NCBI RefSeq assembly: GCF_035084215.1
Contig: NW_027138407.1
Span: 744,001-808,000, forward strand
Length of the DNA stretch: 64,000 nucleotides
Direction: 5' to 3'
DNA from: Heptranchias perlo
Lineage: Eukaryota
Position 1 is the stretch's first letter. Each line of letters starts with the position of its first letter. Shown here piece by piece: positions 24,651-61,270 of this stretch. The notes beneath the pieces were generated by a model. That model was not told the DNA's origin and searched no databases. It worked only from the letters and a program-made list of their open reading frames with translations. Both the position numbers and the translations under genes were made by a program.

Positions 24651-27600
24651 CAACAACAATATCAACAACTTGCATTTATATAGCGTTTTCACTGTAGTAA
24701 AACGTCCCAAGGCGCTTCATAGAAGCGATTATCAAACAAAATTTGACACTGAGCCACATAGGGAGATATTAGAACAGGTGACGAAAAACTTGGTGAATGC
24801 AATAGGATTTAAGGGCCAGACTGGGAGCACAGGGGTGATGAGTGAACGGGACTTGGAGCGAGTTAGGATACAGACAGCAGAGTTTTGGATGACCTCACGT
24901 CTATGGAGGGTGAAGATGGGTGGATGGCCAGGAGAGCATTGGAATAGTCAACTCTAGAGGAAAGAAAGGCATGGGTGAGGGTTTCAGCAGCAGATGAGCT
25001 GAGGCAGGGGCGGAGACGGGCGATATTACCGAGGTGAAAGTAGGCGGTCTTGGTGATGGAGTGAATATGTGGTCAGCAGCTTATCTCAGGGTCAAAGGGG
25101 ACGCCCAAGGTTGCGAACAGTCCGGTTCAGCCTCAGACACTGGCCAGGGAGAGGGATGGAGTTGGCGACTGGGGAACGGAGTTTGTGGCAGGGACTGAAG
25201 ACAATGGCTTCGATCTTCCCAATATTTAGTTGGAGGTTATTTCTGCTCATCCAGTACTGGATGTTGGACAAGCAGTGTGACAAATCAGAGACAGTGGAGC
25301 GGTCGAGGGTGGTGATGGTGCGGTAGAGCTGGTTGTCGTTAATGGACATGTGGAACCTGATGTCATGTTTTCGGATGATATCACCGAGGGGCAGCATGTA
25401 GATGAGAAATAGGAGGGGGCCAAGGATAGATCCCTGGGGGTCTCCAGAGGTATCGGTGTGGCAGTGGGAAGGGAAACCATTGCAGGTGATTCTTTGGCTA
25501 TGACTGGATAGATAAGATTGGAACCAGGCGAGGGCAGTCCCTTCCAGCTGGACGACGGAGGAGAGGCATTGGAGGAGGATGGTGTGGTCGACCGTGTTAA
25601 AGGCTGCAGTCACGGTCACATAGGATGTCATTTGTGAGTTTGATAAGGGTTGTTTCATTCAAGTGCGAGGGCCGGAAATCAGATTGGAGGGATTCAAACA
25701 TGGAGTTGGGAGAAAGATGGACACGGATTTGAGAGGCAACAATCCGTTAAAGGACTTTGGAGAGGAAAGGGAGGTTGGAGATGGGGCGGTAGTTTGCAAG
25801 GACATAGGGGTGATGATGGCAGATTTGAAAGAGCAGAGAATAGTGCCTGAGAAGAGGGAATCGTTAACAATATCAGCTAACATGGGGGCCTGGAAGGGAA
25901 GTTGAGTGGTCAGCAGCTTGGTGGGAATAGGGTCGAGGGAGCAGGAGGTGGGTCTCATGGTCAAGATGAGCTCGGGGAGGGCATGAGGGGCGATAGGAGA
26001 GAAAGTAGAGAAAGATGTGAATTCAGGGCTCGGGCAATGGGAAGTTTGGCTCAGTGGGCTAGAGCAAGGCAGGGAAGTGGCAGAGGCAGCTGAATGGATG
26101 GTCTCAATCTTAGAGACAAAAAAGTGCATAAGCTCCTCGCACTTGTTGATGGAGGTGCGGGTGGAGGAGGCAGGGGAGAGGGGTTTAAGAAGATGGTTTG
26201 CGGTGAAGAGAAGCCGGGAGTTATCTTTGTATTCTAGACTGAGCCTGGAATAGTGATCAGTTTTGGCAGAGGACAGCAGGACCCGATAATACTTTATGTG
26301 GTCCAGCCAAATCTGGCGATAAATGGATAAACCAGTTGTCCGCCATACACTTTCAAGTGTGCGTCCTTTGGAGGTAAAGGATTGGAGATGATGGTCGTCC
26401 GAAGGGGAATGAAAAGGTTGAGAGAGAGTAATGGTTTTAATGGGGACAAGGGCATTAGTGGTGGCGGTGAGGGTGTGATTGAACTGACCGATGGCTGCAG
26501 AAATGTCAAAGCATCGATAGTTGGGAATTTGAAAGTGCCGTTGTAAGTTGCTTGGGGGAGAGTTTTTTCCAGGGGCGGACACAGAAGTAAGTGGGTTTGG
26601 GAGGGGGAAGGGAAATGTGGGTGGAGAGGGATACAAGGAAGTCCTCAGAGATGGCCTTATCTGCAATTGACATGATGGCAGCAGAGAGGCCACGTGAGAT
26701 AACAAGATCGAGGGGGCGGCTGTGAAGATGGGTAATGGAGTTAAATGGAGGGAGATATTAAGGGAGGATAAGAGGGCAGTGAAATCACCAATAACCTGCT
26801 CACCGATGCTCAGTTTGGGTTCCGCCAGGACCACTCGGCTCCAGACCTCATTACAGCCTTGGTTCAAACATGGACAAAAGAGTTGAATTCCAGAGGTGAG
26901 GTGAGAGTGACTGCCCTTGACATCAAGGCAGCATTTGACCGAGTGTGGCACCAAGGAGCCCGAGTAAAATTGAAGTCAATGGGAATCAGGGGGAAAACTC
27001 TCCAGTGGCTGGAGTCATACCTCGCACAAAGGAAAATGGTAGTTGTTGGAGGCCAATCATCTCAGCCCCAGGGCATTACTGCAGGAGTTCCTCAGGGCAG
27101 TGTCCCAGCCCAACCATCTTCAGCTGCTTCATCAATGACCTTCCCTCCATCATAAGGTCAGAAATGGGGATGTTCGCGGATGATTGCACAGTGTTCAGTT
27201 CCATTCGCAACCCCTCAAATAATGAAGCAGTCCGAGCCCGCATGCAGCAAGACCTGGACAATATCCAGGATTGGGCTTATGAGTGGCAAGTAACATTCAC
27301 GCCAGACAAGTGCCAGGCAATGACCATCTCCAACAAGAGAGAGTTTAACCACCTCCCCTTGACATTCAACGACATTACCATCGCCGAATCCCCCACCATC
27401 AACATCCTGGGGGTCACCATTGACCAGAAACTTAACTGGACCAGCCACATAAATACTGTGGCTACGAGAGCAGGTCAGAGGCTGGGTATTCTGCGGCGAG
27501 TGACTCACCTCCTGACTCCCAAAAGCCTTTCCACCATCTACAAAGCACAAGTCAGGAGTGTGATGGAATACTCTCCACTTGCCTGGATCAGTGCAGCTCC

Positions 27601-28690
27601 AACAACACTCAAGAAGCTCGACACCATCCAGGACAAAGCAGCCCGCTTGATTGGCACACCATCCACCACCCCAAACATTCACTCCCTTCACCACCGGCGC
27701 GCAGTGGCTGCAGTGTGGACCATCCACAGGATGGACTGCAGCAACTCGCCAAGGCTTCTTCAACAGCACCTCCCAAACCCGCGACCTCTACCACCTAGAA
27801 GGACAAGAGCAGCAGACACATGGAAACAACACCACCTGCACGTTCCCCTCCTGGTCACACACCATCCCGACTTGGAAATATATCGCCATTCCTTCATCGT
27901 CGCTGGGTCAAAATCCTGGAACTCCCTTCCTAACAGCACTGTGGGAGAACCGTCACCACACGGACTGCAGTGGTTCAAGAAGGCGGCTCACCACCACCTT
28001 CTTAAGGGCAATTAGGGATGGGCAATAAATGCCGGCCTTGCCAGCGACGCCCAAATCCCGTGAACGAATAAAGAAAATGTCGCTCGTTGCACAGGAGCTG
28101 AGGGAGGAAAGCAGCGAAGACACCTCGGTGATGAACATGGTGGTACTTGGGTGGCAGGTAAATAACGAGGATTTTTAAGGGATAGGTGAGAGGGATGGAA
28201 CAAGGTGAGATGCTCAAATGTGGAGTAGGGGGACAGTCCAAGATGTGAGTTGGCCATAAGGGCCACGTCACCATTGTGTCGGTCTGGACGGAGCAAGTGG
28301 TGGAAGGTATAACCAAGCGTGGCGTGGAGACTTCATTAAGGGGGAAGGTGTCAACACCCGTCAGCTAGGTTTTCGTCCAGGCCATATCAATACAATCATC
28401 CACAATTAGCATATGGCTGTCAAGGGCATTGTTCACAAATGAACGGGCATTCTGGAGGGAGATGCGGAGAGGGCGTTGATCGCTGATCCACTGGCAGAGT
28501 CTACAGGGTCAGGGCTGGGAGGGGTGAGTCGAACGGGAAGGAGATTGGCAAGAATAGCCCCCATTGGGCGCATTGGGTGGCAGTTAGGGATGCTGCTGGT
28601 AATGAGCCAGCGATAAGTGCATCCATGAGCCCTTTGGAGGATGCCACGAGAGGCACAGATGGTTGCTGTGGGCTGAGCCACCAGAGTGGA
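24651..28690 (-). mobile_element. Long degraded L2-type LINE (interrupted at 26786-28075)
   Basis: ORFs 25092-25658 (AFNTVDH..PQGSILGPLLF) and 25659-26785 (PTSCSLDPIPTKLL); L2 tail near 24651. Confidence 0.85.
26786..28075 (+). mobile_element. Younger non-LTR retrotransposon (CR1/L2 group) nested in the L2
   Basis: RT motifs LDIKAAFDRVWH, GVPQGS, FADD; the same 3' end occurs at 41671-42120, 42851-43803 and ~12234-12340. Confidence 0.88.
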
Positions 28691-40811: not shown

Positions 40812-41670
40812 CTGAACGAGAAAACAGCTCTGGGAAATGCACCTGGCGCTCTTAAATTATATAAAATATATAATCACATTTAAAATAACTTTCAGAGAAA
40901 AAGGAACATATTTGCAGGGCAATGGGGAAAGAACGAGGGTGTGACCAATTGGATAGCTCTTAAAATGAGCCGACACAGGGACGATGGGCCGAATGGCCTC
41001 ATTCTGTGCTGTAAGATCCTAAGTAAAGCATATAAAATTATATATGTATTTCAATCTAAAATGCTATTTTAAAATAGTTCTTTTGACTCATCCAAGCTTA
41101 AAAACATAATTATGAGCTCTACCTATTTAAATCTATGATGTTCGTGCATGTCATTGATTTGTTTACCTAGTAAATGCAATATGGCTTCATCGAAACTATG
41201 ACTATAGAATCAATGTGTCACAGAAAGTGGACAAAAGTTACCTAAAGGAGAAAGTCTTAACAGTGGCGACAGCAGAGAATTAGCCACTTAAAAGCAGCTA
41301 TATTGAATTGAGCTAAGCTATGTCAGCAGAACTCGATGTCTCGGGCCTTGAATTCCCAGTGGGTTGTGTTCAGACTTGAATCCATTTCACCGGAGCAAAT
41401 TCCTGTTTGAATAAAAATACCAGTAGTAATGACTGCAATATAAGAAGTGACATCGAATAGTGTGCCACTAAAGCGCAAGTTTAATCTTCATTCGGATTTT
41501 AGATGATGAATGTATTGCTGTCTCTAACTCTCTAGCTTGAAAAATTGTGCTGTGCCAATTCTAAAACACTCCATATCGCTTTCCTCTGTTCTTCTACCTA
41601 AATTTTAAGGGACCAGGTAATTAATTTCATGCTAGAGCCTGCAAACAGAGAGAGACCCGAATTTCGTGCC

Positions 41671-42120
41671 ACAGGACAAAGCAGCCCGCTTGATTGGCAC
41701 CCCATCCACCACCCTAAACATTCACTCCCTTCACCACCGGCGCACAGTGGCTGCAGTGTGTACCATCCACAGGATGCACTGCAGCAACTCGCCAAGGCTT
41801 CTTCGACAGCACCTCTCAAACCCGCGACCTCTACCACCTAGAAGGACAAGAGTAGCAGGTACATGGGAACAACACCACCTGCACGTTCCCCTCCAAGTCA
41901 CACACCATCCCGACTTGGAAATATATCGCCGTTCTTTCATCGTCGCTGGGTCAAAATCCTGGAACTCCCTTCCTAACAGCACTGTGGGAGAACCTTCACC
42001 ACACGGACTGCAGCGGTTCAAGAAGGTGGCTCACCACCACCTTCTCAAGGGTAATTAGGGATGGGCAATAAATGCTGGCCTCACCAGCGACGCCCACATC
42101 CCATGAACGAATAAAAACAA
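41671..42120 (+). mobile_element. LINE 3' fragment (family of 26786-28075)
   Basis: QDKAARLIGTPSTTLNIHSLHHRR..SWNSLP. Confidence 0.9.
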
Positions 42121-42850
42121 AACCTTGTGGGTAAGTATGGAACATAGGAGTAGTCTATTCTGCCCCTCAAGCCTGCTCCACCATTGAATGAGATCATGGC
42201 TGATCCGTACCTGAACTCCATTTTCCCGCCTTAGCTCCATATTAATTGCTAGCCTTACCTGACAGAAATCTATCTATCTCAGCCTTTAAAACTCTATTGA
42301 CCCCCAGCATTCACAACCTTTTGTGCGAGAGACTTTCAGATTTCGACTGCCCTTTGTGTGAAATAAAGCTTCCTGATTTCACTCCTAAATGGCTTAGCTC
42401 TAATTTTAAAATTATTTCTTCTCGTTATTGATTCCCACACCAGAGGAAATAGTTTCTCTGCATCTAATCTATCGACTGCTTTTAACATTTGAAACCCCTC
42501 GATCAGATCATCCTCCCCCACAATCTGCAACCTGACCTCTTAACCTGTCGTCAGGAATGGGGAAAAGTTAGAAATTAACAGAGTGAAGTAAGTTTTTTAA
42601 AAATCAGATGAGCAAGATGTAGCTGGTGGGATGAATATGTTCGGTGTTGGGACTTCGTAGACGTGCGTGATTTGGGCATAGGCATGAAGGACATAGCACA
42701 TTTGCTGACCATACGATTTGGGGAGTGGAGACTTGGTGGGAAAGAATGGAACAGATTGCATGAGGACCTATGTGAACTCGAACGTGTTTGGGGAAAAGGA
42801 ATCTAAAATGGAATTATATTCCGAATTACAATAGAGCAGATAAACCGATA

Positions 42851-43803
42851 GGTGAGGTGAGAGTAACTACCCTTGACATCAAGGCAGCATTTGACCGAGT
42901 GTGGCACCAAGGATCCCTAGTTCAGTTCCATTCGCAACACCTCAGATAATGAAGCAGTCCGTGCCAGCATGCAGCAAGACCTGAACAACATCCAGGCTTG
43001 GGCTGATAAGTGGTAAGTAACATTTTTGCCAGACAAGTGCCAGGTATGACCATGTCCAACAAGAGAGAGTCTAACTACCTCCCCTTGACATTCAACGACA
43101 TTACCATCGCCGAATCCTCCACCATCAACATCCTGGGGGTCACCATTGACCAGAAACTTAACTGGACCAGCCACATAAATACTGTGGCTACAAGAGCAGG
43201 TCAGAGGCTGGGCATTCTGCGGCGAGTGACTCACCTCCTGACTCCCCAAAGCCTTTCCACCATCTACAAGGCACAAGTTCAGGAGTGTGATGGAATACTC
43301 TCCACTTGCCTGGATCAGTGCAGCTCCAACAACACTCAAGAAGCTCGACACTATCCGGGACAAAGCAGCCCGCTTGATTGGCACACCATCCACCACCCTA
43401 AACATTCACTCCCTTCACCACCGGCGCAAGTTGGCTGCAGTGTGTACCATCCACAGGATGCACTGCAGCAATTCCCCAAGGCTTCTTCAACAGCACCTCC
43501 CAAACCCGCGACCTCTACCACCTAGAAGGACAAGGGCAGCAGGCACATGGGAACAACACCACCTGCACTTTCCCCTCCAAGTCAGACACTATCCCGACTT
43601 GGAAATATATCGCCGTTCCTTCATCGTCGCTGGGTCAAAACCCTGGGACTCCCTACCTAACAGCACTGTGGGAGAACCTTCACCACACGGACTGCAGCGG
43701 TTCAAGAAGGCGGCTCACCATCACTTTATCAAGGGCAATTAGGGATAGGCAATAAATGCCGGCCTTGCCAGCGACGCCCACATCCCATGTACTAATAAAA
43801 AAC
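42851..43803 (+). mobile_element. LINE fragment with internal deletion (family of 26786-28075)
   Basis: ILGVTIDQKLNWTSHIN..MEYSPLAW..WDSLP. Confidence 0.9.
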
Positions 43804-45351: not shown

Positions 45352-45469
45352 ATGGAGGAAGCAATAATAAAGCAGTCCGATTGGCTCTTTAGCCTATTAT
45401 TAATCACAGTCGGACTTCCACGATTGTGTCAGCCGATCAGTGGTCGCAAACTGGCGTCTGAAAATCGGT

Positions 45470-47140
45470 GAGGGGTTTGGTCCGTTGGGATTGTGTACAT
45501 TTGGAGTAATTGGGAAGGGATTTTGTCTATTGGGATTCTGCACATTGGGAGGGATTGGGAAGGGATTTAGTCCATTGGGATTGTGTACATTGGGAGGGAT
45601 TGGGAAGGGATTTCGTTCATTGGGATTCTGTACATTGGGAGGGATTGGGTAGGGACTTGGTCCATTGGGATTGTGTACGTTGGCAGGGATTGGGAAGGGA
45701 TTTAGTCCATTGGGATTGTGTACATTGGGAGGGACTGGGGAGGGATTTAGTCCATTGGGATTGTGTACATTGGGAGGGATTGGGAAGGGATTTAGTCCAT
45801 TGGGATTCTGTACATTGGGAGGGATTGGGTAGGGACTTGGTCCATTGGGATTGTGTACGTTGGCAGGGATTGGGAAGGGATTTAGTCCATTGGGATTGTG
45901 TACATTGGGAGGGATTGGGGAGGGATTTAGTCCATTGGGATTGTGTACATTGGGAGGGATTGGGAAGGGATTTAGTCCATTGAGATTCTGTACATTGGGA
46001 GGGATTGGGTAGGGACTTGGTCCATTGGGATTGTGTACATTGGGAGGGATTGGGAAGAGCTTTAGTCTATTCGGATTCTGTACATTGGAGTGATTGGGTA
46101 GGGACTTGGTCCATTGGGATTGTGTACATTGGGAGGGATTGGGAAGGGATTTAGTCCATTGGGATTGTGTACATTGGGAGGGATTGGGGAGGGATTTAGT
46201 CCATTGGGATTGTGTACATTGGGAGGGATTGGGAAGGGATTTAGTCCATTGGGATTCTGTACATTGGGAGGGATTGGGTAGGGACTTGGTCCATTGGGAT
46301 TGTGTACGTTGGCAGGGATTGGAAAGGGATTTAGTCCATTGGGATTGTGTACATTGGGAGGGATTGGGGAGGGATTTAGTCCATTGGGATTGTGTACATT
46401 GGGAGGGATTGGGAAGGGATTTAGTCCATTGGGATTCTGTACATTGGGAGGGATTGGGTAGGGACTTGGTCCATTGGGATTGTGTACATTGGGAGGGATT
46501 GGGAAGGGCTTTAGTCTATTCGGATTCTGTACATTGGGAGTGATTGGGTAGGGACTTGGTCCATTGGGATTGTGTACATTGGGAGGGATTGGGAAGGGAT
46601 TTCGTTCATTGGGATTCTGTACATTGGGAGGGATTGGGTAGAGACTTGGTCCATTGGGATTGTGTACATTGGGAGGGATTGGGAAGGGATTTATTCCATT
46701 GGGATTCTGTACATTGGGAGGGATTGGGTAGGGACTTGGTCCATTGGGATTGTGTACATTGGGGGGGATTGGGAAGGGATTTATTCCATTGGGATTCTGT
46801 ACATTGTGAGGGATTGGGTAGGGATTTGTTCCATTGGGATTGTGTACATTGGGAGTAATTGGGAAGGGATTTAGTCCATTGGGATTGTGTAGATTGGGTG
46901 TAATTTCGACGGGATTTAGTCTATTCGGATTCTTTACAATGGGAGGGATTGGGAATTGATTTAGTACATTGGGATTGTGTACATTGGGACTGATTGGGAA
47001 GGAGTTTGGTCCATTGGGACTCTATACAATGTGACTGAATAGGAAGTGGTTTGGTCCATTGGAATTCTATAGAATGGGAGGGAATGGGAAGGGGTTTGGT
47101 CCATCGGAATTCTATACAATGGGAGTGAATAGGAAGAGGT
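45470..47140. repeat. 45-bp G-rich minisatellite in TRDC intron 1 (~35 units)
   Basis: Unit CATTGGGATTGTGTACATTGGGAGGGATTGGGAAGGGATTTAGTC; gives spurious 15-aa repeat ORFs. Confidence 0.97.
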
Positions 47141-47329
47141 TGGTGTAGTGCACTTTGATGCAAAGCTCCCTCTATACTGTCCCATCAACACTCCCAGGGC
47201 AGATACAGCATGTGTTAAATCCATAGTAAAGATCCCTCTACACTTAAATTGGTGAATATTGGCTACAATCCCCGTGTACCCCTTTCATTTCGCTCTGTGC
47301 CAAAAAGCCTTCTGGTTGTCCAAAGAATG

Positions 47330-47762: not shown

Positions 47763-48080
47763 CAGCTCCAGATTGTCGGGCGTCGCTTGCTACGGGAGAG
47801 TCTTTATTGTCTCTTGCCTCACATGTGACATTTACTGATTGTTCGTTTCGATTGAAAGAGAGGAATCCGGAGCTTCTATAGAGCCCGTTGTTTAACAAGT
47901 GACTGGATCCTGTGAAGTTGTTTTTTTCGTTAGTCGTCGTCTTCAAGAAGAACTCGAAATCTTTGGGGAAGAATTCCGACACCAGACACACCGCCGCCGT
48001 GTCGACGCTGCCTCCACCCCCAATTGGTATGGCGGGTGGGTAAAAGACCGACAAGGTGGGATTTTTCTGAGGTTGGTCCT
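47763..48080 (-). CDS. TRDC: TCR delta constant Ig-C1 exon DQPQKNPTLSVFYPP..AAVCLVSEFFPK..GLYRSSGFLSF..VNVTCEAR..SGA
   Basis: taattttcag acceptor and G|GTGAGT donor, phase 1/1, 318 nt open; two C1 cysteines, CL..F.P motif, NFT/NVT sequons; resembles shark TRDC as recalled; lies downstream of a 12/23 D and a J cluster and upstream of a long J array. Confidence 0.92.
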
Positions 48081-50894: not shown

Positions 50895-53745
50895 GGGCCG
50901 GTATTAGGACCACTGCTCTTTTTGATATATATTAATGACCTGGACTTGGGTATACAGAGTATAATTTCAAAGTTCGCAGATGAAACAAGACTCAGGAATG
51001 TAGGAAACAGTGTGGAGGATAGTAACAGACTCCAGGAGGACATAGACAGACTGGTAAAATGGGCATACACTTGGTAGATGAAATTTAATGCAGAGAAGTG
51101 TGAAGTGATTCATTTTGGTAGGGAGAATGAGGAGAGGCAATGTAAACTAAATGGTACAATCTTAAAGGGGATACAAGAATAGAGAGACCTGAGGAGGGGT
51201 GGCGGGTTGGGGGGGGGGGGTGTACACAAATCTTTGAAGGTGGTAGGACAAGTTGAGAAGGCTGTTAAATAAAGTATATGGGAACCGGGGCTTTATAAAT
51301 CGAGGCATAGAGTACAAAAGTAAGGAAGTTATGCTAAACCTTTATAAAACACTGGTTAGGCCCCGGCTGGAGTATCGTGTCCAATTCTGGGCACCACATT
51401 TTAGGAAGGATGTCAAGGCCTTGGAGAGGGCGAGGAGGAGATTTACTAGAATGGTACCAGGGATGAGGGACTTCAGTTCTGTGGAGGGATTCGAGAAGCT
51501 GGGATTGTTCTCTCTAGTGCAAAGAGCTTCTACAAATACATAAAGGGCAAAAGAGTAACTAGGGAGAGAGTAGGGCCTCTTAAGGATCAACAAGGTCATC
51601 TATGTGCGGAACCACAAGAGATGGGAGAGATCCTAAATGAATATTTCGCATCGGCATTTACGGTTGAGAAAGGCATGGATGTTAGGGAACTTGGGAAAAT
51701 AAATAGTGATGTCTTGAGGAGTGTACATATTACAGAAAGGGAGGTGCTGGAAGTCTTAACACGCAACAAGGTAGATAAATCTCCGGGACGTGATAAAATG
51801 TCTCCCAGGACGTTATGGGAGGTTAGGGAGGAAATTGCGGGTCCCCTAGCAGAGATATTTGAATCATCGACAGCTACAGGTGAGGTGCCTGAAGATTGGA
51901 GGGTAGCAAATGTTGTGCCTTTGTTTAAGAAGGGCGGCAGGGGAAAGCCTGGGAACTACAGACCGGTGAGCCTGACATCTGTAGTGGGTAAGTTGTTAGA
52001 GGGTATTCTGAGAGACAGGATCTACAGGCATTTGGAGAGGCAGGGACTGATTAGGAACAGTCAGCATGGTTTTGTGAGAGGAAAATCATGTCTCACGAAT
52101 TTGATTGAGTTTTTTGAAGGGGTAACCAAGAAGATAGATGAGGGCTGTGCAGTAGACGTGGTCTACATGGACTTTAGCAAAGCCTTTGACAAGGTACCGC
52201 ATGGTAGGTTGTTATATAAGGTTAAATCTCACGGGATCCAAGGTGAGGTAGCCAATTGGATACAAAATTGGATTGACGACAGAAGACAGAGGGTGGTTGT
52301 AGAGGGTTGTTTTTCAAACTGGAGGCCTGTGACCAGCGGTGTGCCTCAGGGATCGGTGCTGGGTCCGCTGTTATTTGTTATTTATATTAATGATTTGGAT
52401 GAGAATTTAGGAGGCATGGTTAGTAAGTTTGCAGATGACACCAAGATTGGTGGCATTGTGGACAGTGAAGAAGGTTATCTAGGATTGGAACGGGATCTTG
52501 ATAAATTGGGCCAGTGGGCCGATGAATGGCAGATGGAGTTTAATTTAGATAAATGTGAGGTGATGCATTTTGATAGATCGAATCGGGCCAGGACCTACTC
52601 TGTTAATGGTAGGGCGTTGGGGAGAGTTATAGAACAAAGAGATCTAGGAGTACAGGTTCATAGCTCCTTGAAAGTGGAGTCACAGGTGGATAGGGTGGTG
52701 AAGAAGGCATTCAGCATGCTTGGTTTCATTGGTCAGAACATTGAATACAGGAGTTGGGATGTCTTGTTGAAGTTGTACAAGACATTAGTAAGGCCACACT
52801 TGGAATACTGTGTACAGTTCTGGTCACCCTATTATAGAAAGGATATTATTAAACTAGAAAGAGTGCAGAAAAGATTTACTAGGTTGCTACCGGGACTTGA
52901 TGGTTTGACTTATAGGGAGAGGTTGGATAGACTGAGACTTTTTTCCCTGGAGAGTAGGAGGTTTAGGGGTGACCTTAAAGAAGTCTATAAAATAATGAGG
53001 GGCATAGATAAGGTAGATAGTCAAAATCTTTTCCCAAAGGTAGGGGAGTCTATAACTAGGGGGCATAAATTTAAGGTGAGAGGGGAGAGATACAAAAGGG
53101 TCCAGAGGGGCAATTTTTTCACTCAAAGGGTGGTGAGTGTCTGGAACGAGCTGCCAGAGGCAGTAGTAGAGACGGGTACAATTTTGTCTTTTAAAAAGCA
53201 TTTGGACAGTTACATGGGTAAGATGGGTATAGAGGGATATGGGCCAAGTGCAGGCAATTGGGACTAGCTTAGTGGTATAAACTGGGCGACATGGACATGT
53301 TGGGCCGAAGGGCCTGTTTCCATGTTGTAAACTTCTATGATTCTAGTGCAGAGAAGGTTCAGGGGAGATTTGATAGAGGTGTTCAAAATTATGAAGGGTT
53401 TTGACAGAATAAATAAGGAGAAACTGTTTCCACTGTCAGGAGGGACGGTAACCAGAAGAAACACATTTAAGATAATTGCCAAAAAGAGCCAGGAGGGGAG
53501 ATGAGCATATTGTTTTTTACTCAGTGACTTTTAGGTCCTGGAATGCATTGTCTGAAAGGGCGTTGGAAGCAAATTCAATATTAACTTTCAGAAGGGAATT
53601 GGATATATACTTGAAAGGGCACTATTTTGCACGGCTATGGGGAAAGAGCAGAGTGGCGTGCGCCTAATTGTACAACACTTTCATAGAGCCAGCACAGGCA
53701 CGATGGGCCAAAATGTCTCCTTCTGTGCTGCATCATTCTATGAAA
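50895..53745 (+). mobile_element. Older CR1-type LINE, interrupted at 51522-53341
   Basis: RT fragments; the host sequence GGGATTGTTCTC..GCAGAGAAGG is split by the insertion. Confidence 0.85.
51522..53341 (+). mobile_element. Young 5'-truncated CR1 LINE with a 548-aa open RT-containing ORF2 (51621-53267)
   Basis: YRPVSL, QHGF, DFSKAFD, GVPQGSVLGP, FADD without stops; flanked by a TCTAGTGCA direct repeat (51513-51521, 53342-53350). Confidence 0.95.
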
Positions 53746-53933
53746 AGCGCTGGATTAATGCTATCGCTAAAATGGTGTTCGTAGTTCGTACGAGACAATG
53801 CAATGTCACCGTCCCTTATTTCCAACGTAAATGTTATTATTAAGACAAACATTCTTTTGGGATGATGCAACGTTTTGTTCAGGAACCATCTTGTCTTTTC
53901 ATGACATAAACATTTTTTATCAGAAAATAATTA

Positions 53934-55270
53934 ATGAGAGGGTGACTGAACACCTCGAGAATTTTCAGTTAATCAGAGTGAGCCAGCATGGATTTGTGAA
54001 AGGTAGGTCATGCCTGACAAACCTGATTGAATTTTTTGAAGAGGTGACTAAAGTAGTGGACAGGGGAATGTCAATGGATGTTATTTATATGGACTTCCAG
54101 AAGGCATTTGATAAGGTCCCACATAAGAGACTGTTAGCTAAGATAGAAGCCCATGGAATCGTGGGAAAATTACGGACTTGGTTAGGAAATTGGCTGAGCG
54201 AAAGGCGACAGAGAGTAGGGATAATGGGTGTGAACTTACATTGGCAGGATGTGACTAGTGGAGTCCCGCAGGGATCTGTCTTGAGGCCTCAATTATTCAC
54301 AATATTTATTGATGACTTAGATGAAGGCATAGAAAGTCTCATATCTAAGTTTGCCGATGCCACAAAGATTGGTGGCATTGTAAGCAGTGTAGATGAAAAC
54401 ATAAAATTACAAAGCGATATTGATAGATTAGGTGAATGGGCAAAACTGTGGCAAATGGAATTCAATGTAGACAAATGTGAGGTCATCCACTTTGGATCAA
54501 AAAAGGATCGAACAGGGTACTTTCTAAATGGTAAAAAGTTAAAAACAGTGGATGTTCAAAGGGACTTAAGGGTTCAGGTACATAGATCATTGAAGTGTTA
54601 TGAACAGGTGCAGAAAATAATCAAGAAGGCTAATGGAATGCTGGCCTTTATATCTGGAAGACTGGAGTACAAGGTGGCAGAAGTTATGCTGCAGCTATAC
54701 AAAACCCTGGTGAGACCGCACCTGGAGTACTGAGAGCAGTTCTGGGCCACGCACCTTCGGAAGGACATATTGGCCTTGGAGGGAGTGCAGCGAGGGTTTA
54801 CTAGAATGATACCTGGACTTCAAGGGTTAAGTTACAAGGAGAGATTACACAAATTGGGGTTGTATTCTCTTGAGTTTCGAAGGTTAAGGGGTGATCTGAT
54901 CGAAGTTTATAAGATATTAAGGGGAACAGATAGGGTGGATAGAGAGAAACTATTTCCGCTGGTTGGGGATTCTAGGAGTAAGGGGCACAGTCTAAAATTT
55001 AGGCCCAGACCTTTCAGGAGTGAGATTAGAAAACATTTCTACACACAAAGGGTGGTAGAAGTTTGGAACTCTCTTCCACAAACGGCAATTGATACGAGCT
55101 CAATTGCTAAATTTAAATGTGAGATAGATAGTTTTTTGGCAACCAAAGGTATTCAGGGATATGGGTCAAAGGCGGGTATATGGAGCTAGATCACAGATCA
55201 GTCATGACCTTATCAAATGGCGGAGCAGGCACGAGGGGCTGAATGGCCTACTCCTGTTCCTATGTTCCTA
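53934..55270 (+). mobile_element. CR1-type LINE 3' part
   Basis: RT ORFs 53831-54733 and 54770-55189; TGTTCCTA tail. Confidence 0.92.
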
Positions 55271-55433: not shown

Positions 55434-55948
55434 ACGACAGCCACTTCTTTCAACAAAAACTTTCCACTATATTCATAGTCCCGGGTTCTTGCCATTGACA
55501 TATATTGTCAACGCACATATATTGTGAGCTAGGTCGAGTAGTACCCGCTCACATTGTCCCACATCTTGAACTCACACTGCCTATGTAATGCCCCACATTT
55601 AGTTTAATATCGTTTTCCATTTAGTACCCGACCTGAAGGGGTAGTGCAAGCAAATTCAATACTGACTTTCCAAGCCCCAAATTCGCGAGGAAGTGGGGTG
55701 AATTGGATCGCTCTTTCAAAGTGCGGACATGGACACGGTGGGCCGAATGGCCTCCTCCTATGATATATGATTCTGTAATTCTATAATATAATTGTGAATG
55801 CGCATAATTTCTGACCTCAATTTGTAGTGGTCATTTTATCCCTCCCCAAATTTTATACTGCAGAAGTGTTTTGCACATACTTCAGAATGCGAAAGCTCAG
55901 TTATTTTTACTAAAGCAAGATCAAAATAAGAGACGTTAGAAGACTTAC

Positions 55949-56008
55949 TGGGTTCTACAATGAGTTTGGTGCCACTTCCAAAGATAAGCTTTTCAGTTCT
56001 GTAGTCAG
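55949..56008 (-). CDS. TRDJ: TCR delta J segment DYRTEKLIFGSGTKLIVEP
   Basis: GTAAGT donor; CACAGTT(56009-56015)-12-ACAAAAACA. Confidence 0.92.
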
Positions 56009-56431
56009 CACAGTTGTACCAGATGTGACAAAAACAGGTCCAACCAAATGAACAGTATTGTAAGGGTTTTTTTTAAAAAAACAATCCTGACTTGACTAGC
56101 TTTGAGTTTCAAGTATACTTTGCGATTATACTTGCTTCCATTTCCTCCCGAAACAAATATAACGGTTTTCCCCACCATCAAACTGAATTTCCTTTGCACT
56201 ATTTTAAAAGCACAAGGAATGGATACCAGTTCACCTTTCCTTCCTGACATTTTTCCATTAGCATCTTTCTGTAGCCAACTCCTGAGGGAATTGTTTGACA
56301 TCAGAATGATTTTGATATCAGTAGATTCGATCAGTATATATTGATTTCAAATACGCATGCCTTAGTTCTGCGTTAGCGGTTGAAAACAAACAAAGCAATG
56401 TGTTGAGAAGGAAAAATGAGGTTCCATTCAT

Positions 56432-56492
56432 TCCATTCCACAGTTATTTGGGTCCTCTTTCCAAATGGGAGTTTCCTATCACTGTAGCAATA
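56432..56492 (-). pseudogene. TRDJ: TRDJ pseudogene CYSDRKLPFGKRTQITVEW
   Basis: FGKR; donor decayed to ATGAAT; CACAATT(56493-56499)-12-GCAATATCC. Confidence 0.65.
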
Positions 56493-56720
56493 CACAATTC
56501 TGTATTTCAGGGCAATATCCTATTACAGAGACCTGGAGTTTCAACTCCTGGCCACTGCACGTTTAATTAATGGGTGAGCTGAGTTGGACTGCTATCTTCT
56601 TAAAGTTTCTTTTCTCAATGAAAGTTTCTTTTCTCAATGGCTCTTTGCCAACAGTCGCCAGATAAATTTCAGCCGAAAATTACATCAAGATGAAAGTAAC
56701 AAAACTCAGTTAGCACTTAC

Positions 56721-56782
56721 TTGGCACAACTGTCAGTTGGGTCCCGCTGCCGAAGGTTAGTTTCTCAGTATAGTCATAATTA
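56721..56782 (-). CDS. TRDJ: TCR delta J segment NYDYTEKLTFGSGTQLTVVP
   Basis: GTAAGT donor; CACAGTA(56783-56789)-12-ACAGAAACC. Confidence 0.92.
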
Positions 56783-56848
56783 CACAGTAACAATTGCCCT
56801 GACAGAAACCTTCACTTGGACCAACTGATCCAGTTTCCAGCTTTACAC

Positions 56849-56900
56849 TAGAAAGAAGCACTTTGGTCCCATCTCCAAATGTCAGTGATAACTAGCCTGT
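56849..56900 (-). pseudogene. TRDJ: TRDJ relic (*)LSLTFGDGTKVLLS
   Basis: LTFGDGTK motif; in-frame TAG upstream, weak GTGTAA donor, no RSS. Confidence 0.5.
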
Positions 56901-57430
56901 AATCAACCTCCCATTGTCCGAGAAATTCTCGCCCTAGGAATTAAACTACCAACAGGTGCATTCTGTGTTTATCAAGCTTGGTGCCCTGTTTAGTCATAGC
57001 CCAATACAAACATATGGGACACGGTATCCTTCACTTTAGGCTCAGTGGGTAGCAATCTTGTCTCTGCGTCAGAAGGTTGTGGGCGCAAACTAGCAAAAGA
57101 ACCGGAGGGGAAATGAAGGGAATCTTTTTACTCCGTTTTTTACTCAGTTTTACTCATAACTTTGTTACGACCTGGAATACACTGCCTGAAAGGATGGTGG
57201 AAGCAGATTCAATAGTAAATTTCACAAGGAAATTGAATACATACTTGGAAAGGAAAACATTGCAGGCAATGGGGAAAGAGCAAGGGAAGTGGGATTAATT
57301 TGATTGCTCTTTCAAAGAGCTGGCGCAGGCACAATGGGCCGAATGGCCTCCTTCTGTGCTGTATGATTCTATGATTTTATGATTGAAAGGACACAAAATC
57401 GCTCATGTGCATTTAACAGTTCATACTTAC

Positions 57431-57482
57431 TTGGTTCCACTATGAGTTTCGTCCCTTTACCGAAGATAAGCTTATCAGTGAA
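57431..57482 (-). CDS. TRDJ: TCR delta J segment FTDKLIFGKGTKLIVEP (TRDJ1-like)
   Basis: GTAAGT donor; CACGGTG(57483-57489)-12-GCAGAAACC. Confidence 0.94.
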
Positions 57483-57584
57483 CACGGTGCTAAATCTTTG
57501 TGCAGAAACCGCCTGTCACACAACGTATCTGCCACCATGAGTACCTTAGCGTTCCTAACTATCTGTGTTTTTCACGACACAACA

Positions 57585-58135
57585 TTATCTGGTCTCCATA
57601 TTACAAAAAGGATACAGAGGATCTGTCGACGGTGCAAAAAAGATTTACAACGATGATACCAGAATTCAGAGGTTATATCTGTCAGGAAAGGCTGAACAGG
57701 CTGGCGCTCTTTTCTCTAGAGAAGAGGAGGCTGAGGGGTTACCTGAAAGAGGGCTTTAAGATTATGAACGGTTTCGATAGGGTAGACGTGGAGAAGATGT
57801 TTTTTTTTTCACTTGTGGGGGAATTCAAAACTAGAGGTCATAAATTTAAGATAGTCACTAATAAATGCAATAAGGAATTCAGGAGCAACTTCTTTACCCA
57901 GAGAATGGTTAGAACGTGGAACTCGCTACCACAAGGAGTAGTTGAGGCGAATAGTATAGCTACATTTAGGGTAAAGCTAGATAAACACATGAGGGAGAAA
58001 GGAATAGAAGGTTATGCTGATATGGTGAGATGAAGTAGGTTGAGAGGAGGCTCGTGTGGACCATAAACACCGGCATAGACCTGTTGAGCCTAATGGCCTG
58101 TTTCTGTGCTGTAAACTCTATGCAATTTTATGTAT
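57585..58135 (+). mobile_element. CR1-type LINE 3' fragment
   Basis: WSPYYKKD..RRLRGYL..FFTQRMVRTWNSLP. Confidence 0.88.
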
Positions 58136-58607
58136 CAAATATTTTCTCCTTACAAGACGTGTGCCTGCGGCCCAATAGTTAGACAAAGTTAAAAAAAAAT
58201 CAGCATTGAAAGGAGCAAAACCAGAGAATTTGTGGGGCCCACTATAAAATGGAGTCTTGAGGAGCATAAGGAAGCGTGTTGGTCTCACTCACATCGACCT
58301 CATTCTAAATGATTTCGTATTGGGGCTTTCAATGGGGAAAAGTAATTTTCAAAAGGTGATCAAGTTTCTTTTGGATCATTCTGGTACCCGGATCACCTGA
58401 TAACCCTCAGTGCACCTGAGATAATTAGTCTTGAGAAGAACCGATTGTGTACAAATATAGAAAGCACATTTCCCCCTCACTGGAGAATTTCTTATGCTCA
58501 CTTTCCTGGATGCCAACTAACAATTTTGCTCCCCTCTTTTGAAGAGAGCAGCAACTTCTGCATGTAAAATGAATCTCGCCAAATCGATAACAATAGTTTA
58601 TACTCAC

Positions 58608-58652
58608 TTGGCTCCACAGTCAGCTTGGTCCCAGTTCCGAATATTAGCGGGG
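58608..58652 (-). CDS. TRDJ: TCR delta J segment PLIFGTGTKLTVEP (heptamer only, no nonamer)
   Basis: GTGAGT donor; CACAGTG at 58653-58659; expected nonamer position reads TAGGTTATA. Confidence 0.75.
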
Positions 58653-58685
58653 CACAGTGATACATCTACAGTAGGTTATACTCAC

Positions 58686-58746
58686 TCGGCTCCACAGTTA
58701 ACCTGGTCCCGCTACCGAAGGTTAGTTTCTGAAGGCTGCTTGTTCA
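58686..58746 (-). pseudogene. TRDJ: TRDJ pseudogene TSSLQKLTFGSGTRLTVEP (no RSS)
   Basis: Intact FR4 and GTGAGT donor; no CAC heptamer or nonamer upstream. Confidence 0.75.
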
Positions 58747-59091
58747 AGCATTGATTGTAAAATCCAATTCACTTTCCTTCATTAATTTCAACCTCTACAC
58801 AAATCATGAACTGCATTGATGGTAAGTATAAAAACTGCGAAATCTTAGAACTAGAACCAGAGGAAATCTCCACCTGCCACCCCCCACCCCCTATAAGCGT
58901 AACTCAAATTTGAGGTTTTGGAAAGGCTGTAGGGCTCCCTAAATTGTCCTTGTTGTAGTTTTTGCATCTGAAACATGGCTTATCATTTCAAACTGATTCC
59001 TTAGCATTAGAACTAAGGCACGCAGAAAAAAAATTAGATTCATTTGCAGACTTGAAATCGTATCGCAAATATTCTGGTGGAATACACTTAC

Positions 59092-59155
59092 TGGGTTCCA
59101 CTATCAACGTGTTCCCATTTCCAAATGTCGCCTTCGCACTCTTACCGATAACTTT
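59092..59155 (-). pseudogene. TRDJ: TRDJ pseudogene VIGKSAKATFGNGNTLIVEP
   Basis: FGNG motif and GTAAGT donor; no recognisable CAC heptamer. Confidence 0.7.
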
Positions 59156-59600
59156 TAAGCTCCAAACATTCCTCAACCTGACAATTTGCAACATTTGTAA
59201 ACTGTACCTTAACACTCTATGTCAAAGTGCAGTGAAGCCTAATCTATACCACGGTTCTTAGAAGTAAATTTGTACATGGAGGGAGGATGAGAAGGTGGTA
59301 GTGGTGGTTGGGGCGGTGGATTAAGGATTTGCCTGGGTCCCTATCTGTAATGCACTGCCTGAAATGATGGTAGAAGCAGATTCAATAAAAACTTAATAAA
59401 AGTTAAATTCAATAAAAGGGAATTGGGTAATTATTTGAAAGGGAAATATTTGCAAGGCTATAGAGACAGAGCAGCCGAGTGGGACTAACTAGTTTGCTCT
59501 TTCTGGCCCCTCTACCAAGATTCACCAGAAGACAAACACCGGGCGATTGTTTCCATCTACAAGGGAAGAGAACGGGACACTTTCCTTACGTTTTACTTAC

Positions 59601-59666
59601 CCGCTTCTATAATTACTCTGGTCCCACTTCCGAATATTAGTGTAGTCGTACGATCCCAATAATCTG
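59601..59666 (-). CDS. TRDJ: TCR delta J segment DYWDRTTTLIFGSGTRVIIEA
   Basis: GTAAGT donor; CACAGTG(59667-59673)-12-CCAGAAACT. Confidence 0.9.
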
Positions 59667-60014
59667 CACAGTGACAACTGAACAGCCAGAAACTTCCAGG
59701 AACACATTTAGTGTTTCAGGGCGGTGAGGGGCTAGGGGGTGCATGTAACTGTCTGGGCTGGAGCTTAAAAGAAGCACCAGGAATTTAGATTGCGGCCGAA
59801 ACTGGCTGAAATTACGAACTGGACAACTTTAGAATTGTTGCTTAATTGTACTACGCCGTTACACATGTAGGTCAGTGAAACAACGCCCGCTGGTACATAC
59901 ACGTATTTGTTCGTGCTAAGGACTGGATATCGGGTTAAGGAAAAGACCCCGACTTTGCATCATCCGCTAAAGCGCCCCGAATATGAGAGAGAGAGAAGGC
60001 TCAAATCCACTTAC

Positions 60015-60070
60015 TCGGTTGCACAATCAATCTGCTCCCCGGTTCCAAATGTCAGCTTAACCCCCCAGCC
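60015..60070 (-). pseudogene. TRDJ: TRDJ pseudogene KLTFGTG/SRLIVQP (frameshift)
   Basis: An extra G after FGTG shifts the frame relative to the GTAAGT donor; heptamer missing. Confidence 0.75.
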
Positions 60071-60172
60071 AATACTGTTGTGTACAAAAAAAACTGTGCG
60101 AACTATTAATTAAGTCTCCAAATAGTAAAAGGAGAAAAAGTTGAGAGACCAAATTGAGGTGTTGGTACTTAC

Positions 60173-60235
60173 TGGGTTCCACAATCAGCCTGGTTCCATT
60201 CCCAAACGTTAACTTTTCATCCTGCCCAAATATAA
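60173..60235 (-). CDS. TRDJ: TCR delta J segment IFGQDEKLTFGNGTRLIVEP (D-proximal)
   Basis: GTAAGT donor; CACACCG(60236-60242)-12-ACAAGATCC. Confidence 0.88.
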
Positions 60236-60568
60236 CACACCGTTTAATCCTACAACAAGATCCCTTGGCATCTCCTCCACATCTCCCGGTGACTGGTGTT
60301 CTTGTTCCAGAAGGGTAATACTAATAAGTAAACTAGACATGTCCTTATTCTAAGGTCGTCTTGCAGTAGTTCCCGCAGTTGGACCCGGCAATAAGTATCC
60401 CGGAGAAATCAAGCTGAAAAGAATCGAAAATGGGAACGGTCCGGGGGGTAATCGTTGCTTGATTCTAACCGGGCCATCCCGGGGGAGGGGGTGTTGAGCG
60501 TGGTGTTGTACTGTTCTGTGTAGGTAGAAGGTTATTGTACGAGCGCATAAGGAAATTCAATTACTGTG

Positions 60569-60583
60569 CGTATACCCCAGTCC
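60569..60583 (-). CDS. TRDD: TCR delta D segment GGACTGGGGTATACG
   Basis: 5' 12-RSS (+ strand CACAGTG 60584-60590, 12 bp, ACAAAAACT 60603-60611) and 3' 23-RSS (+ strand GGTTATTGT 60530-60538, 23 bp, TACTGTG 60562-60568); open in all three frames (GLGYT, DWGI, TGVY). Confidence 0.95.
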
Positions 60584-60624
60584 CACAGTGATACAGCTCA
60601 GCACAAAAACTGTTCACTTGCTGC

Positions 60625-60662
60625 TGCCGCCAACTGGGTCACGTGACGTAGCGACGTCAGAA
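60625..60662. promoter_or_regulatory. Candidate D-delta germline promoter
   Basis: CAACTG (MYB, 60631-60636), palindromic GTCACGTGAC (USF-type E-box, 60638-60647) overlapping TGACGT, and GACGTCA (CRE-like, 60653-60659), all just upstream of the D 12-RSS. Confidence 0.55.
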
Positions 60663-60689
60663 CCTCTCTGAGAGCTGCAAAATCACCCA

Positions 60690-61270
60690 CGTGCATTTAA
60701 ACAGCGCCTTTAACTTAGTGAAACGTCCCAAGGCGGATTATCAAACAAAATTTGGAAACCGAGCCACATAAGGAGACATTGGAACATTTGGTCAAAGAGA
60801 TAGGTTTTAAGGAGCGTCTTACAGGAGGAGAGAGAGGTGGAGAGGCGGAGAGATTTAGGGAGGGGATTCCAGAACTTAGGACATAGGCAGCTGAAGGCAC
60901 GGCCGCTAATGGTGGGATGAAGGAAGTGAAGGATGCGCAAGAGACCAGAGTTGGAAGAACGCAGAGCTCTCGGAGGCTTGTCGAGTTGGAAGAGGTTACA
61001 GAGATAGGGAAGGGTGAGGCCATGGAGGCATTTGAAAACAAGGACGAGAATTTGAAAATGGAGGTGCTGTTAGACTGGGAGCCAATGTAGGTCAGGGAGC
61101 ACAGGGGTGATAGGTGAGAGGGACTTGGTGCAAGTTAGGATTGGGGCAGCAGAGTTTTGGATAAGATCAAGTTTACGGAAGGTGCAACTTGGGAGGCCGG
61201 CCAGGAAAGCATTAAAATTGTCGAGTCTGGAGGTAACAAAGGCACTGATAAGGGTTTAAGTAGCAGGTGA
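60690..61270 (-). mobile_element. L2-type LINE 3' fragment
   Basis: GRAFSC..FWNPLPKSLRLS..KTLLKTYLF. Confidence 0.85.

What the first reader, a model, noticed from the sequence alone, without database searches (positions are those of the whole stretch)
60530..60611. D-delta core matches human TRDD3 at 12 of 13 nt
Seen: GGACTGGGGTATACG with a 5' 12-RSS and a 3' 23-RSS, open in all frames. Recalled human TRDD3: ACTGGGGGATACG, versus ACTGGGGTATACG here; both are the J-proximal D. Extreme conservation is well known for D-beta (GGGACAGGGGGC) but much less appreciated for D-delta. Nucleotide-level conservation in all frames suggests a constraint on both peptide (LG, WG, TG motifs) and DNA (RAG or factor binding).
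Basis: partly seen in the sequence, partly recalled or inferred. Interest (0 to 1): 0.8.

Follow-up and report, generated by a model that had tools for sequence, protein, structure and literature searches.

The report
Shark T-cell-receptor delta D segment
This is a genuine diversity (D) gene segment of a shark T-cell receptor delta locus whose 15-letter core matches the human TRDD3 segment at 12 of 13 letters, more than chance gives; it is an expected gene with a modestly interesting conservation, because bony fish and cattle share only a looser motif.

Summary
On the minus strand, 60611-60530 holds a 12-RSS, the core GGACTGGGGTATACG and a 23-RSS, with 29 of 32 consensus positions. It is the only D-type unit in the window. 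It lies about 340 nt upstream of a J-delta cluster, C-delta and the J-alpha array.

Composition-preserving shuffles of the shark core reach 12 of 13 in only 3-6 per 100,000.

The "extreme conservation" reading is only partly supported. Germline D-delta cores of salmonids and cattle share a looser motif (GGAYTGGGG, GGGATAC(G) at the 3' end; per-core p about 0.01 to not significant). Axolotl has no D-delta. So this is a conserved motif family, and the shark-human pair sits in its upper tail.

New here: spliced RNA contigs of the same animal break 2-3 nt inside the core, keep the germline 23-RSS and splice from the first J to C. That is either a V-to-D (or D-to-D) joint made before D-to-J, as in human TRD, or a germline transcript from a promoter-like E-box/CRE/Myb cluster just upstream, as at mouse Trdd2.

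Verdict: new member of a known kind, moderate interest.

The parts
60603..60611 (-). 5' D-RSS nonamer AGTTTTTGT (8 of 9 to consensus)
60591..60602 (-). 12-nt spacer GCTGAGCTGTAT
60584..60590 (-). 5' D-RSS heptamer CACTGTG (7 of 7)
60569..60583 (-). D-delta coding core GGACTGGGGTATACG. Positions 60581-60569 match the human TRDD3 13-mer at 12 of 13.
   Evidence: human string
60562..60568 (-). 3' D-RSS heptamer CACAGTA (6 of 7)
60539..60561 (-). 23-nt spacer ATTGAATTTCCTTATGCGCTCGT
60530..60538 (-). 3' D-RSS nonamer ACAATAACC (8 of 9)
60625..60693 (-). Promoter-like cluster 40-110 nt upstream of the core: two CACGTG E-boxes (60640, 60688; 2 of only 8 in the window), CRE-like TGACGT/ACGTCA (60644, 60654) and a Myb-type CAACTG (60631). 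It lies in unique sequence between a repeat and the D.
   Evidence: the unique DNA contig ends at 60732; mouse Trdd2 promoter precedent
60173..60581 (-). Stretch carried without any difference by spliced RNA contigs of the same animal. It runs from 2-3 nt inside the D core, through the germline 23-RSS and the D-J spacer, to the last base of the first J exon. One contig carries unmatched letters 5' of 60581. Another carries 921 nt beyond the splice donor.
   Evidence: records 15 (X5) and 24 (X6)
60173..60232 (-). First J-delta-like segment (..KLTFGNGTRLIVEP) with a weak 12-RSS (12 of 16) and a GTAAGT donor at 60172. The transcript above uses it as its splice donor.
57431..57510 (-). J-delta with a 12-RSS, encoding TDKLIFGKGTKLIVEP. 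The TDKLI motif is the one seen in human CDR3-delta sequences.
   Evidence: human TDKLI
47763..48080 (-). C-delta exon 1 (Ig C1-set-like). It places the D in a TRD context.

Best explanation
[quoted passage not shown] It probably corresponds to the J-proximal D-delta of mammals (human TRDD3, mouse TRDD2).

How it works (from established V(D)J biology): RAG cuts at the heptamer-core borders under the 12/23 rule. A V segment with a 23-RSS, or an upstream D, joins the 5' side through the 12-RSS. The 3' side joins a J-delta with a 12-RSS through the 23-RSS. The 15-nt core, read in any of three open frames (GLGYT, DWGI, TGVY), supplies the Gly/Trp/Tyr-rich centre of CDR3-delta.

Shown here:
- the anatomy and the position in the locus;
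- the 12 of 13 identity to the human TRDD3 core, and that chance is a poor explanation for it;
- related cores in teleosts and cattle;
- an RNA-specific discontinuity 2-3 nt inside the core, with the 3' RSS still germline.

Inferred:
- The core similarity reflects descent from one ancestral D-delta kept by selection, mainly on what the three frames encode. Local DNA constraints may add to this, because both ends are RAG coding flanks and a germline promoter-like cluster sits 40-110 nt upstream.
- The RNA discontinuity is a V-to-D (or D-to-D) coding joint made before D-to-J joining. That is the order peculiar to mammalian TRD.
For: - D unit: canonical 12-RSS, 15-nt core and 23-RSS, 29 of 32 consensus positions, the only such unit in the window.
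- Locus order on the minus strand: D, then J-delta cluster, C-delta exon 1, then J-alpha array.
- C-delta exon 1 is most similar to shark TCR delta-type constant regions.
- The human 13-mer is verified in papers.
- The 12 of 13 match has shuffle p of 3e-5 to 6e-5.
- Related germline cores: cattle TRDD1 and TRDD5, salmonid TRDD2 and TRDD3, the mouse TRDD2 3' end.
- A germline DNA contig is identical across the unit (record 8).
- Spliced RNA contigs in two runs end or diverge at 60580/60581, retain the 23-RSS, and splice exactly at the J donor 60173|GT (records 15 and 24).
- No AG precedes 60581, so the break is not a splice acceptor.
- V-to-D first is the documented order in human TRD (abstracts).
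- Promoter-like cluster upstream. Mouse Trdd2 has its own germline promoter, regulated by USF1, Runx1 and c-Myb, whose transcripts end up spliced to C-delta.
Against: - No rearranged CDR3-delta sequence from this species was seen.
- The letters of the unmatched contig overhang were not shown, so a V end could not be recognised. A library adaptor or a transcription start at the core cannot be excluded.
- The RNA runs are only guessed to be RNA by their record, although the exact exon-end break argues for RNA.
- Conservation is uneven. Salmonid TRDD3, the J-proximal D there, is not significantly like the shark core, and cattle TRDD5 is borderline. Axolotl lacks TRDD.
- Orthology of a 15-nt element cannot be proved from sequence alone.
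- No other cartilaginous-fish locus could be examined.
- No Runx consensus is present in the upstream cluster.
Confidence: 0.6

Rival explanations
1. The D segment is real, but its near-identity to human TRDD3 is convergence rather than retained ancestry. Short D cores of TCR delta and beta are repeatedly pushed toward the same G-rich, stop-free strings that encode Gly/Trp/Tyr in all frames, with purine or pyrimidine preferences next to the heptamers. Independent lineages therefore land on similar sequences.
For: - The shark core also resembles the D-beta 12-mer (8 of 11, p 0.04). That 12-mer recurs in mouse, human, catfish and squamate TRB papers.
- Intermediate lineages are less similar to the shark than human is. 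Salmonid TRDD3 is not significant and cattle TRDD5 has p 0.06. That is not what simple clock-like descent predicts.
- D-delta number and sequence turn over quickly in mammals (5-9 in ruminants and camels) and D-delta is lost in axolotl.
Against: - The shuffle null already fixes composition and still gives 3-6e-5 for 12 of 13.
- The shared 3' block ATAC(G) is not G-rich. It is flush with the 3' heptamer in shark, human, cattle, mouse and trout.
- Position relative to a TDKLIFGKG-type J and to C-delta is the same across these species.
Confidence: 0.25
2. The RNA discontinuity at 60580/81 is the start site of a sterile germline transcript, not a recombination joint. The transcript would be driven by the E-box/CRE/Myb cluster just upstream, as at mouse Trdd2. 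It would run through the unrearranged 23-RSS and spacer and splice from the first J to C-delta. The D would then double as part of a core promoter, which would add a DNA-level constraint on its sequence.
For: - Two CACGTG, two CRE-like sites and a Myb-type site lie 40-110 nt upstream of the break.
- Mouse germline Tcrd transcripts start at a Trdd2-associated promoter and are spliced to C-delta.
- The X6 contig simply ends at 60580.
- A gene model of another sevengill-type shark (XP_067833084.1) also reads from germline sequence upstream of a J into C-delta. Its first 33 residues align to window 60340-60242.
Against: - The X5 contig continues beyond 60581 with letters unlike the germline.
- The bases around 60581 (GG|AC) are not a pyrimidine-purine initiator. 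No TATA-like box is evident other than the T-rich nonamer.
Confidence: 0.35
3. The 12 of 13 match is plain chance among many short G-rich D segments and many possible species comparisons.
For: - The elements are only 13-15 nt long.
- Several other D-delta cores do not match significantly.
Against: - Shuffle p is 3-6e-5, which survives correction for the roughly 12 cores compared.
- The match sits exactly between the two heptamers and nowhere else in 64 kb.
- Related motifs occur in the same position in teleosts and mammals.
Confidence: 0.05

Closest known systems
Human TRDD3 (D-delta-3), the J-proximal D of the human TRD locus
   Same: - The 13-nt core is identical at 12 of 13 positions.
- Two frames encode the same or nearly the same peptides: WGI in both, and LGYT against LGDT.
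- Human TRD joins V to this D before D-to-J. The shark RNA contigs are compatible with that order.
   Different: - The shark core has two extra 5' G and a T where human has G. This gives TGVY instead of TGGY, and Y instead of D in the L-G frame.
- Human RSS and flanks were not compared. No human sequence was fetched, by rule.
- Humans have two further D-delta segments upstream. For the shark this is unknown beyond the window.
Mouse TRDD2 with its germline promoter (regulated by USF1, Runx1 and c-Myb)
   Same: - The 3' end reads GGGATACGAG, then heptamer CACAGTG (primer). The shark reads GGGTATACG, then CACAGTA.
- A promoter is tightly associated with the D, and its germline transcripts are spliced to C-delta.
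- The shark has USF-type E-boxes and a Myb-type site directly upstream.
   Different: - No Runx consensus was found in the shark cluster.
- Promoter activity is untested.
- The primary paper on the mouse promoter was not readable here. Only its title and a citing paper were available.
Salmonid TRDD1-3 (Atlantic salmon, rainbow trout)
   Same: - Same unit grammar of 12-RSS, core of 8-14 nt, 23-RSS, open in three frames.
- TRDD3 lies about 330 nt upstream of the single TRDJ, as here (about 340 nt).
- Cores end in GGGATAC or GGGTTAC, and TRDD2 begins TGGAT-TGGG.
- By eye, the shark's 12- and 23-nt spacers match those of salmon TRDD3 at 7 of 12 and 13 of 23 positions.
   Different: - Ungapped identity to the shark core is modest: 9 of 12 for salmon TRDD2, and not significant for TRDD3.
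- The teleost V array is inverted downstream of the D-J-C cluster.
TRBD1 core
   Same: - Short, G-rich and open in all frames.
- Shares GGAC-N-GGGG with the shark D-delta (8 of 11).
- Its conservation from fish to mammals is the textbook precedent. The string occurs in mouse, human, catfish and squamate papers.
   Different: - It belongs to a different locus (TRB).
- It lacks the ATACG 3' block.
- TRB joins D to J before V to DJ.

Membership tests
TCR delta diversity gene segment (TRDD) | Short coding core flanked by a 5' 12-RSS and a 3' 23-RSS, with both heptamers abutting the core | tested here: met
   29 of 32 consensus positions, spacers exactly 12 and 23 nt
TCR delta diversity gene segment (TRDD) | Lies upstream of J-delta and C-delta, in the same orientation, inside the TRA/TRD locus (J-alpha array downstream of C-delta) | tested here: met
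   On the minus strand: D at 60.57 kb, J-delta at 60.2-49 kb, C-delta exon 1 at 48.08-47.76 kb, J-alpha 12-RSSs at 23.2-1.7 kb. V segments lie outside the window and are known only from unchecked scan notes.
TCR delta diversity gene segment (TRDD) | Readable without stop in the three forward frames | tested here: met
   GLGYT, DWGI, TGVY
TCR delta diversity gene segment (TRDD) | Used in somatic rearrangement (core found in junctions) | tested here: inconclusive
   RNA contigs break at 60580/81 inside the core while DNA is continuous. The overhang letters were not available, so a transcription start is not excluded.
Counterpart of human TRDD3 / mouse TRDD2 (J-proximal D-delta) | It is the D nearest to the J-delta cluster | tested here: met
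   No other D-type unit in the window. The first J lies about 340 nt downstream.
Counterpart of human TRDD3 / mouse TRDD2 (J-proximal D-delta) | Core sequence homologous to the mammalian one | tested here: met
   12 of 13 to the human core, p 3-6e-5. 7 of 8 to the GGGATACG block of cattle TRDD5 and mouse TRDD2.
Counterpart of human TRDD3 / mouse TRDD2 (J-proximal D-delta) | Own germline promoter bound by USF1, Runx1 and c-Myb | tested here: inconclusive
   Two CACGTG, CRE-like sites and CAACTG within 110 nt upstream; no Runx consensus. Activity was not testable here.
Counterpart of human TRDD3 / mouse TRDD2 (J-proximal D-delta) | V-to-D joining precedes D-to-J joining | tested here: inconclusive
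   A transcript carries a break at the 5' side of the core with the 3' RSS intact. The same pattern fits a germline start site.
Counterpart of human TRDD3 / mouse TRDD2 (J-proximal D-delta) | Syntenic continuity through intermediate lineages (other chondrichthyans, basal bony fishes, amphibians, sauropsids) | not testable with these tools
The nurse shark and Xenopus papers are not held. Only salmonid, cattle and partial mouse data were obtained.

The most novel reading that the evidence does not exclude
The whole J-proximal D-delta module would be one ancient recombination-centre unit kept since the last common ancestor of sharks and mammals. The module comprises the germline promoter (USF-type E-boxes, Myb, CRE), the 12-RSS, a core constrained both as peptide in three frames and as DNA, and the 23-RSS. 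On this reading, the peculiar V-to-D-first order of TRD rearrangement is equally ancient and is visible in this shark as abundant VD-only transcripts spliced from a weak-RSS J.
Probability: 0.25. Interest if true: 0.6.

Novelty: new member of a known kind. Interest (0 to 1): 0.4.

Why it matters
D segments are the shortest genes in the genome and are usually thought too small and too fast-evolving to trace. D-beta is the one textbook exception. A D-delta core that is nearly the same in a shark and in humans suggests two things. The centre of the gamma-delta receptor's main antigen-contacting loop has been held to a narrow set of peptides (WGI, LG-T, TG-Y) for over 400 million years. The local machinery around it (promoter, order of joining) may be just as old. 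That would give a concrete, testable handle on what germline-encoded CDR3-delta motifs are for. If the similarity is only a family motif plus luck, this is a routine annotation of an expected gene segment.

Tried and rejected
**Fetching other shark loci failed**
- C-delta exon 1 found nothing in the word search.
- The full HMMER search gave shark TCR delta-type proteins from Heptranchias, Pristiophorus, Mustelus, Scyliorhinus, Hypanus and Chiloscyllium.
- A second word search with P0001 gave only NAR-TCR-cluster paralogues and gene models without D-encoded junctions.

**Literature**
- The nurse shark, NAR-TCR and Xenopus papers are not held.
- No held paper text contains 12-mers of the shark core.
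- Sheep, dromedary and duck D sequences are in figures that are not held.

**Readings considered and rejected**
- A splice acceptor at the RNA break: no AG precedes it.
- Another D in the window: none.
- A chance match elsewhere in the window: none.

- J and C exons were not joined into a spliced model for searching.
- I did not scan metagenome contigs with a degenerate core pattern, because it would mainly retrieve human contamination.
- The run of N at about 45.2-45.4 kb was left as it is.

Full report
**What is there**

Read on the minus strand, window 60611-60530 is a textbook D gene unit:

- nonamer AGTTTTTGT
- a 12-nt spacer
- heptamer CACTGTG
- the 15-nt core GGACTGGGGTATACG (60583-60569)
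- heptamer CACAGTA
- a 23-nt spacer
- nonamer ACAATAACC

A consensus scan finds 26 12-RSS matches in the window against 0.8 expected, all in the orientation of J segments on the minus strand. It finds exactly one 23-RSS, the one on the 3' side of this core. My own relaxed scan for complete D-type units on both strands returns only this unit, with 29 of 32 consensus positions. The core is open in all three forward frames (GLGYT, DWGI, TGVY) and in the reverse frames too.

**Context**

Downstream on the minus strand lie these features:

- A cluster of J segments with FGXG motifs and GTAAGT donors at 60.2-49 kb. One of them encodes TDKLIFGKGTKLIVEP.
- An Ig C1-set-like exon at 48080-47763. Its best relatives are shark TCR delta-type constant regions, the best being Heptranchias perlo at 62% identity.
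- A connecting-peptide exon and a transmembrane exon near 45.2 and 44.9 kb.
- A J-alpha-type array from 23.2 to 1.7 kb.

This is the D-J-C delta unit nested in a TRA/TRD locus of a cartilaginous fish. An earlier follow-up note of this scan calls the genome a sevengill shark. I did not verify the species.

**The match to human**

It appears whole in a human CDR3-delta clone primer. Its inner 11 nt are assigned to TRDD3 in a repertoire table.

The shark core from 60581 to 60569 equals it at 12 of 13 positions, with one G-to-T change. The consequences for the three frames are:

- WGI stays unchanged.
- LGDT becomes LGYT.
- TGGY becomes TGVY.

Nowhere else in the window is within two mismatches of the human string. 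Shuffling the shark core, which keeps its G-richness, reaches 12 of 13 in 61 of 2,000,000 trials and 3 of 50,000 trials. Chance is therefore a poor explanation, even after allowing for the dozen cores I compared.

**Other lineages**

Germline D-delta units printed in supplements give the following picture.

Cattle:
- TRDD1 is GTTGGACTGGGGGG and shares GGACTGGGG with the shark (9 of 11, p 0.009).
- TRDD5, the J-proximal one, is GGTGGGATACG (8 of 11, p 0.06).

Mouse:
- TRDD2 ends GGGATACGAG directly before CACAGTG. This comes from a ChIP primer.

Salmonids:
- Trout TRDD3, the J-proximal one about 330 nt from the J, is TGGGGTGGGATAC.
- Salmon TRDD3 is TGGGGTGGGTTAC.
- Salmon TRDD2 is TGGATTGGGATAC (9 of 12, p 0.011).
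- TRDD1 is TGGACTAC.

A family motif therefore exists: GGAYTGGGG at the 5' side and GGG(N)ATAC(G) flush with the 3' heptamer. It appears in shark, teleosts and mammals. But the intermediate lineages are less like the shark than human is. Axolotl has no TRDD at all, and ruminants and camels have multiplied and diversified theirs.

The shark core also resembles the D-beta 12-mer (8 of 11, p 0.04). That 12-mer is itself widespread in TRB papers from fish to mammals.

My reading is that a motif family is conserved, probably by descent with selection on the encoded peptides. The shark-human near-identity is the lucky upper tail of it. It is not evidence for unbroken nucleotide-level stasis.

**Evidence of activity**

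Contigs of four runs from one animal were laid on 55900-60900.

- A DNA contig covers 58098-60732 with no difference, so the germline sequence is sound.
- In two of the three runs guessed to be RNA, contigs match without any difference from the last base of the first J exon (60173, directly before GTAAGT) up to 60581 (X5) or 60580 (X6).
- The X6 contig carries 921 further letters beyond the splice donor. The X5 contig carries unmatched letters at both ends.

These are spliced transcripts. They contain the germline 23-RSS and the D-J spacer but stop being germline 2-3 nt inside the D core. No AG precedes 60581, so the break is not a splice acceptor.

Two readings remain.

- **A V-to-D (or D-to-D) coding joint.** This joint would have two G trimmed and would be made before D-to-J joining. 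Its transcript would run on to the first splice donor. That order is described as a unique property of the TRD locus in human (abstracts). The unmatched overhang in X5 and the non-initiator sequence at the break favour this reading.
- **A germline transcript starting at the core.** Directly upstream, in unique sequence, lie two of the window's eight CACGTG E-boxes (60640, 60688), two CRE-like sites (60644, 60654) and a Myb-type CAACTG (60631). Mouse Trdd2 has its own promoter, regulated by USF1, Runx1 and c-Myb, whose transcripts end up spliced to C-delta. A gene model of Heptranchias perlo likewise reads from germline sequence upstream of a J into a C-delta. Its first 33 residues align to window 60340-60242.

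I put it at roughly 60:40 in favour of a joint. Either way the D lies in an active part of the locus.

**How it most likely works**

RAG cuts at both heptamer borders under the 12/23 rule. V segments or an upstream D join the 5' side, and a J-delta joins the 3' side. The core contributes up to five residues to CDR3-delta in any frame. This follows from established V(D)J biology and the anatomy shown here. Actual use in shark CDR3s is inferred.

Both ends of so short a core are RAG coding flanks, and a promoter-like cluster sits within 110 nt. Nothing here tests it.

**Novelty and verdict**

A D-delta segment at this place is expected. In the searchable library no paper lists a shark D-delta core or remarks on D-delta conservation beyond mammals. 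However, the key nurse shark papers are not held, so priority cannot be judged.

I class it as a new member of a known kind, of moderate interest.

**Limits**

- J and C were not joined for any search. Exon 1 was searched alone.
- The N run near 45.2-45.4 kb was left untouched.

Noticed in passing
window 60625-60693: Dense cluster of two CACGTG E-boxes, two CRE-like sites and a Myb-type site directly upstream of the D 12-RSS. Only 8 CACGTG occur in the whole window. It resembles what is reported for the mouse Trdd2 promoter.
   Followed up: partly
window 60173-60232: The first J downstream of the D has only a weak 12-RSS (12 of 16; heptamer CGGTGTG, nonamer GGATCTTGT) but a perfect donor. It is the donor used by the D-containing transcript, so it may act mainly as a splice donor for unrearranged or VD-only transcripts.
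   Followed up: partly
window 57403-57569: The DNA run shows zero depth over the J that encodes TDKLIFGKGTKLIVEP, while one RNA run shows depth about 36. The DNA hole is probably the tool's silent filter for human-like reads, not a deletion.
   Followed up: no
window 60242-60340 versus P0001 (XP_067833084.1, Heptranchias perlo): The D-J spacer aligns, as a translated string, at 48% to the N-terminus of a gene model attached to a second C-delta (62% identical). The related model P0024 carries NAR-type and supporting V domains. This suggests that duplicated J-C delta clusters copied part of this spacer.
   Followed up: partly
window 45440-47230: A long tandem array gives repetitive ORFs (GLGRDLVHWDCVHWE...) on the plus strand, inside the C-delta gene between exon 1 and the connecting-peptide exon. 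A run of N lies beside it at about 45.2-45.4 kb and was left as it is.
   Followed up: no
window 25000-28100, 41600-43800, 51600-55200: Reverse-transcriptase ORFs of LINE-type retroelements (up to 548 aa) are interspersed in the J-delta to C-delta and C-delta to J-alpha intervals. Very high read depth at 57.0-58.2 kb and beyond 60.74 kb marks SINE- or LINE-type repeats.
   Followed up: no
window 56086-56635: Low-depth RNA-run contigs cover intergenic sequence between two J-delta segments, with three T-to-G or T-to-C differences from the assembly that are absent from the DNA run. Each rests on one contig at depth under 7, so they may be errors.
   Followed up: no
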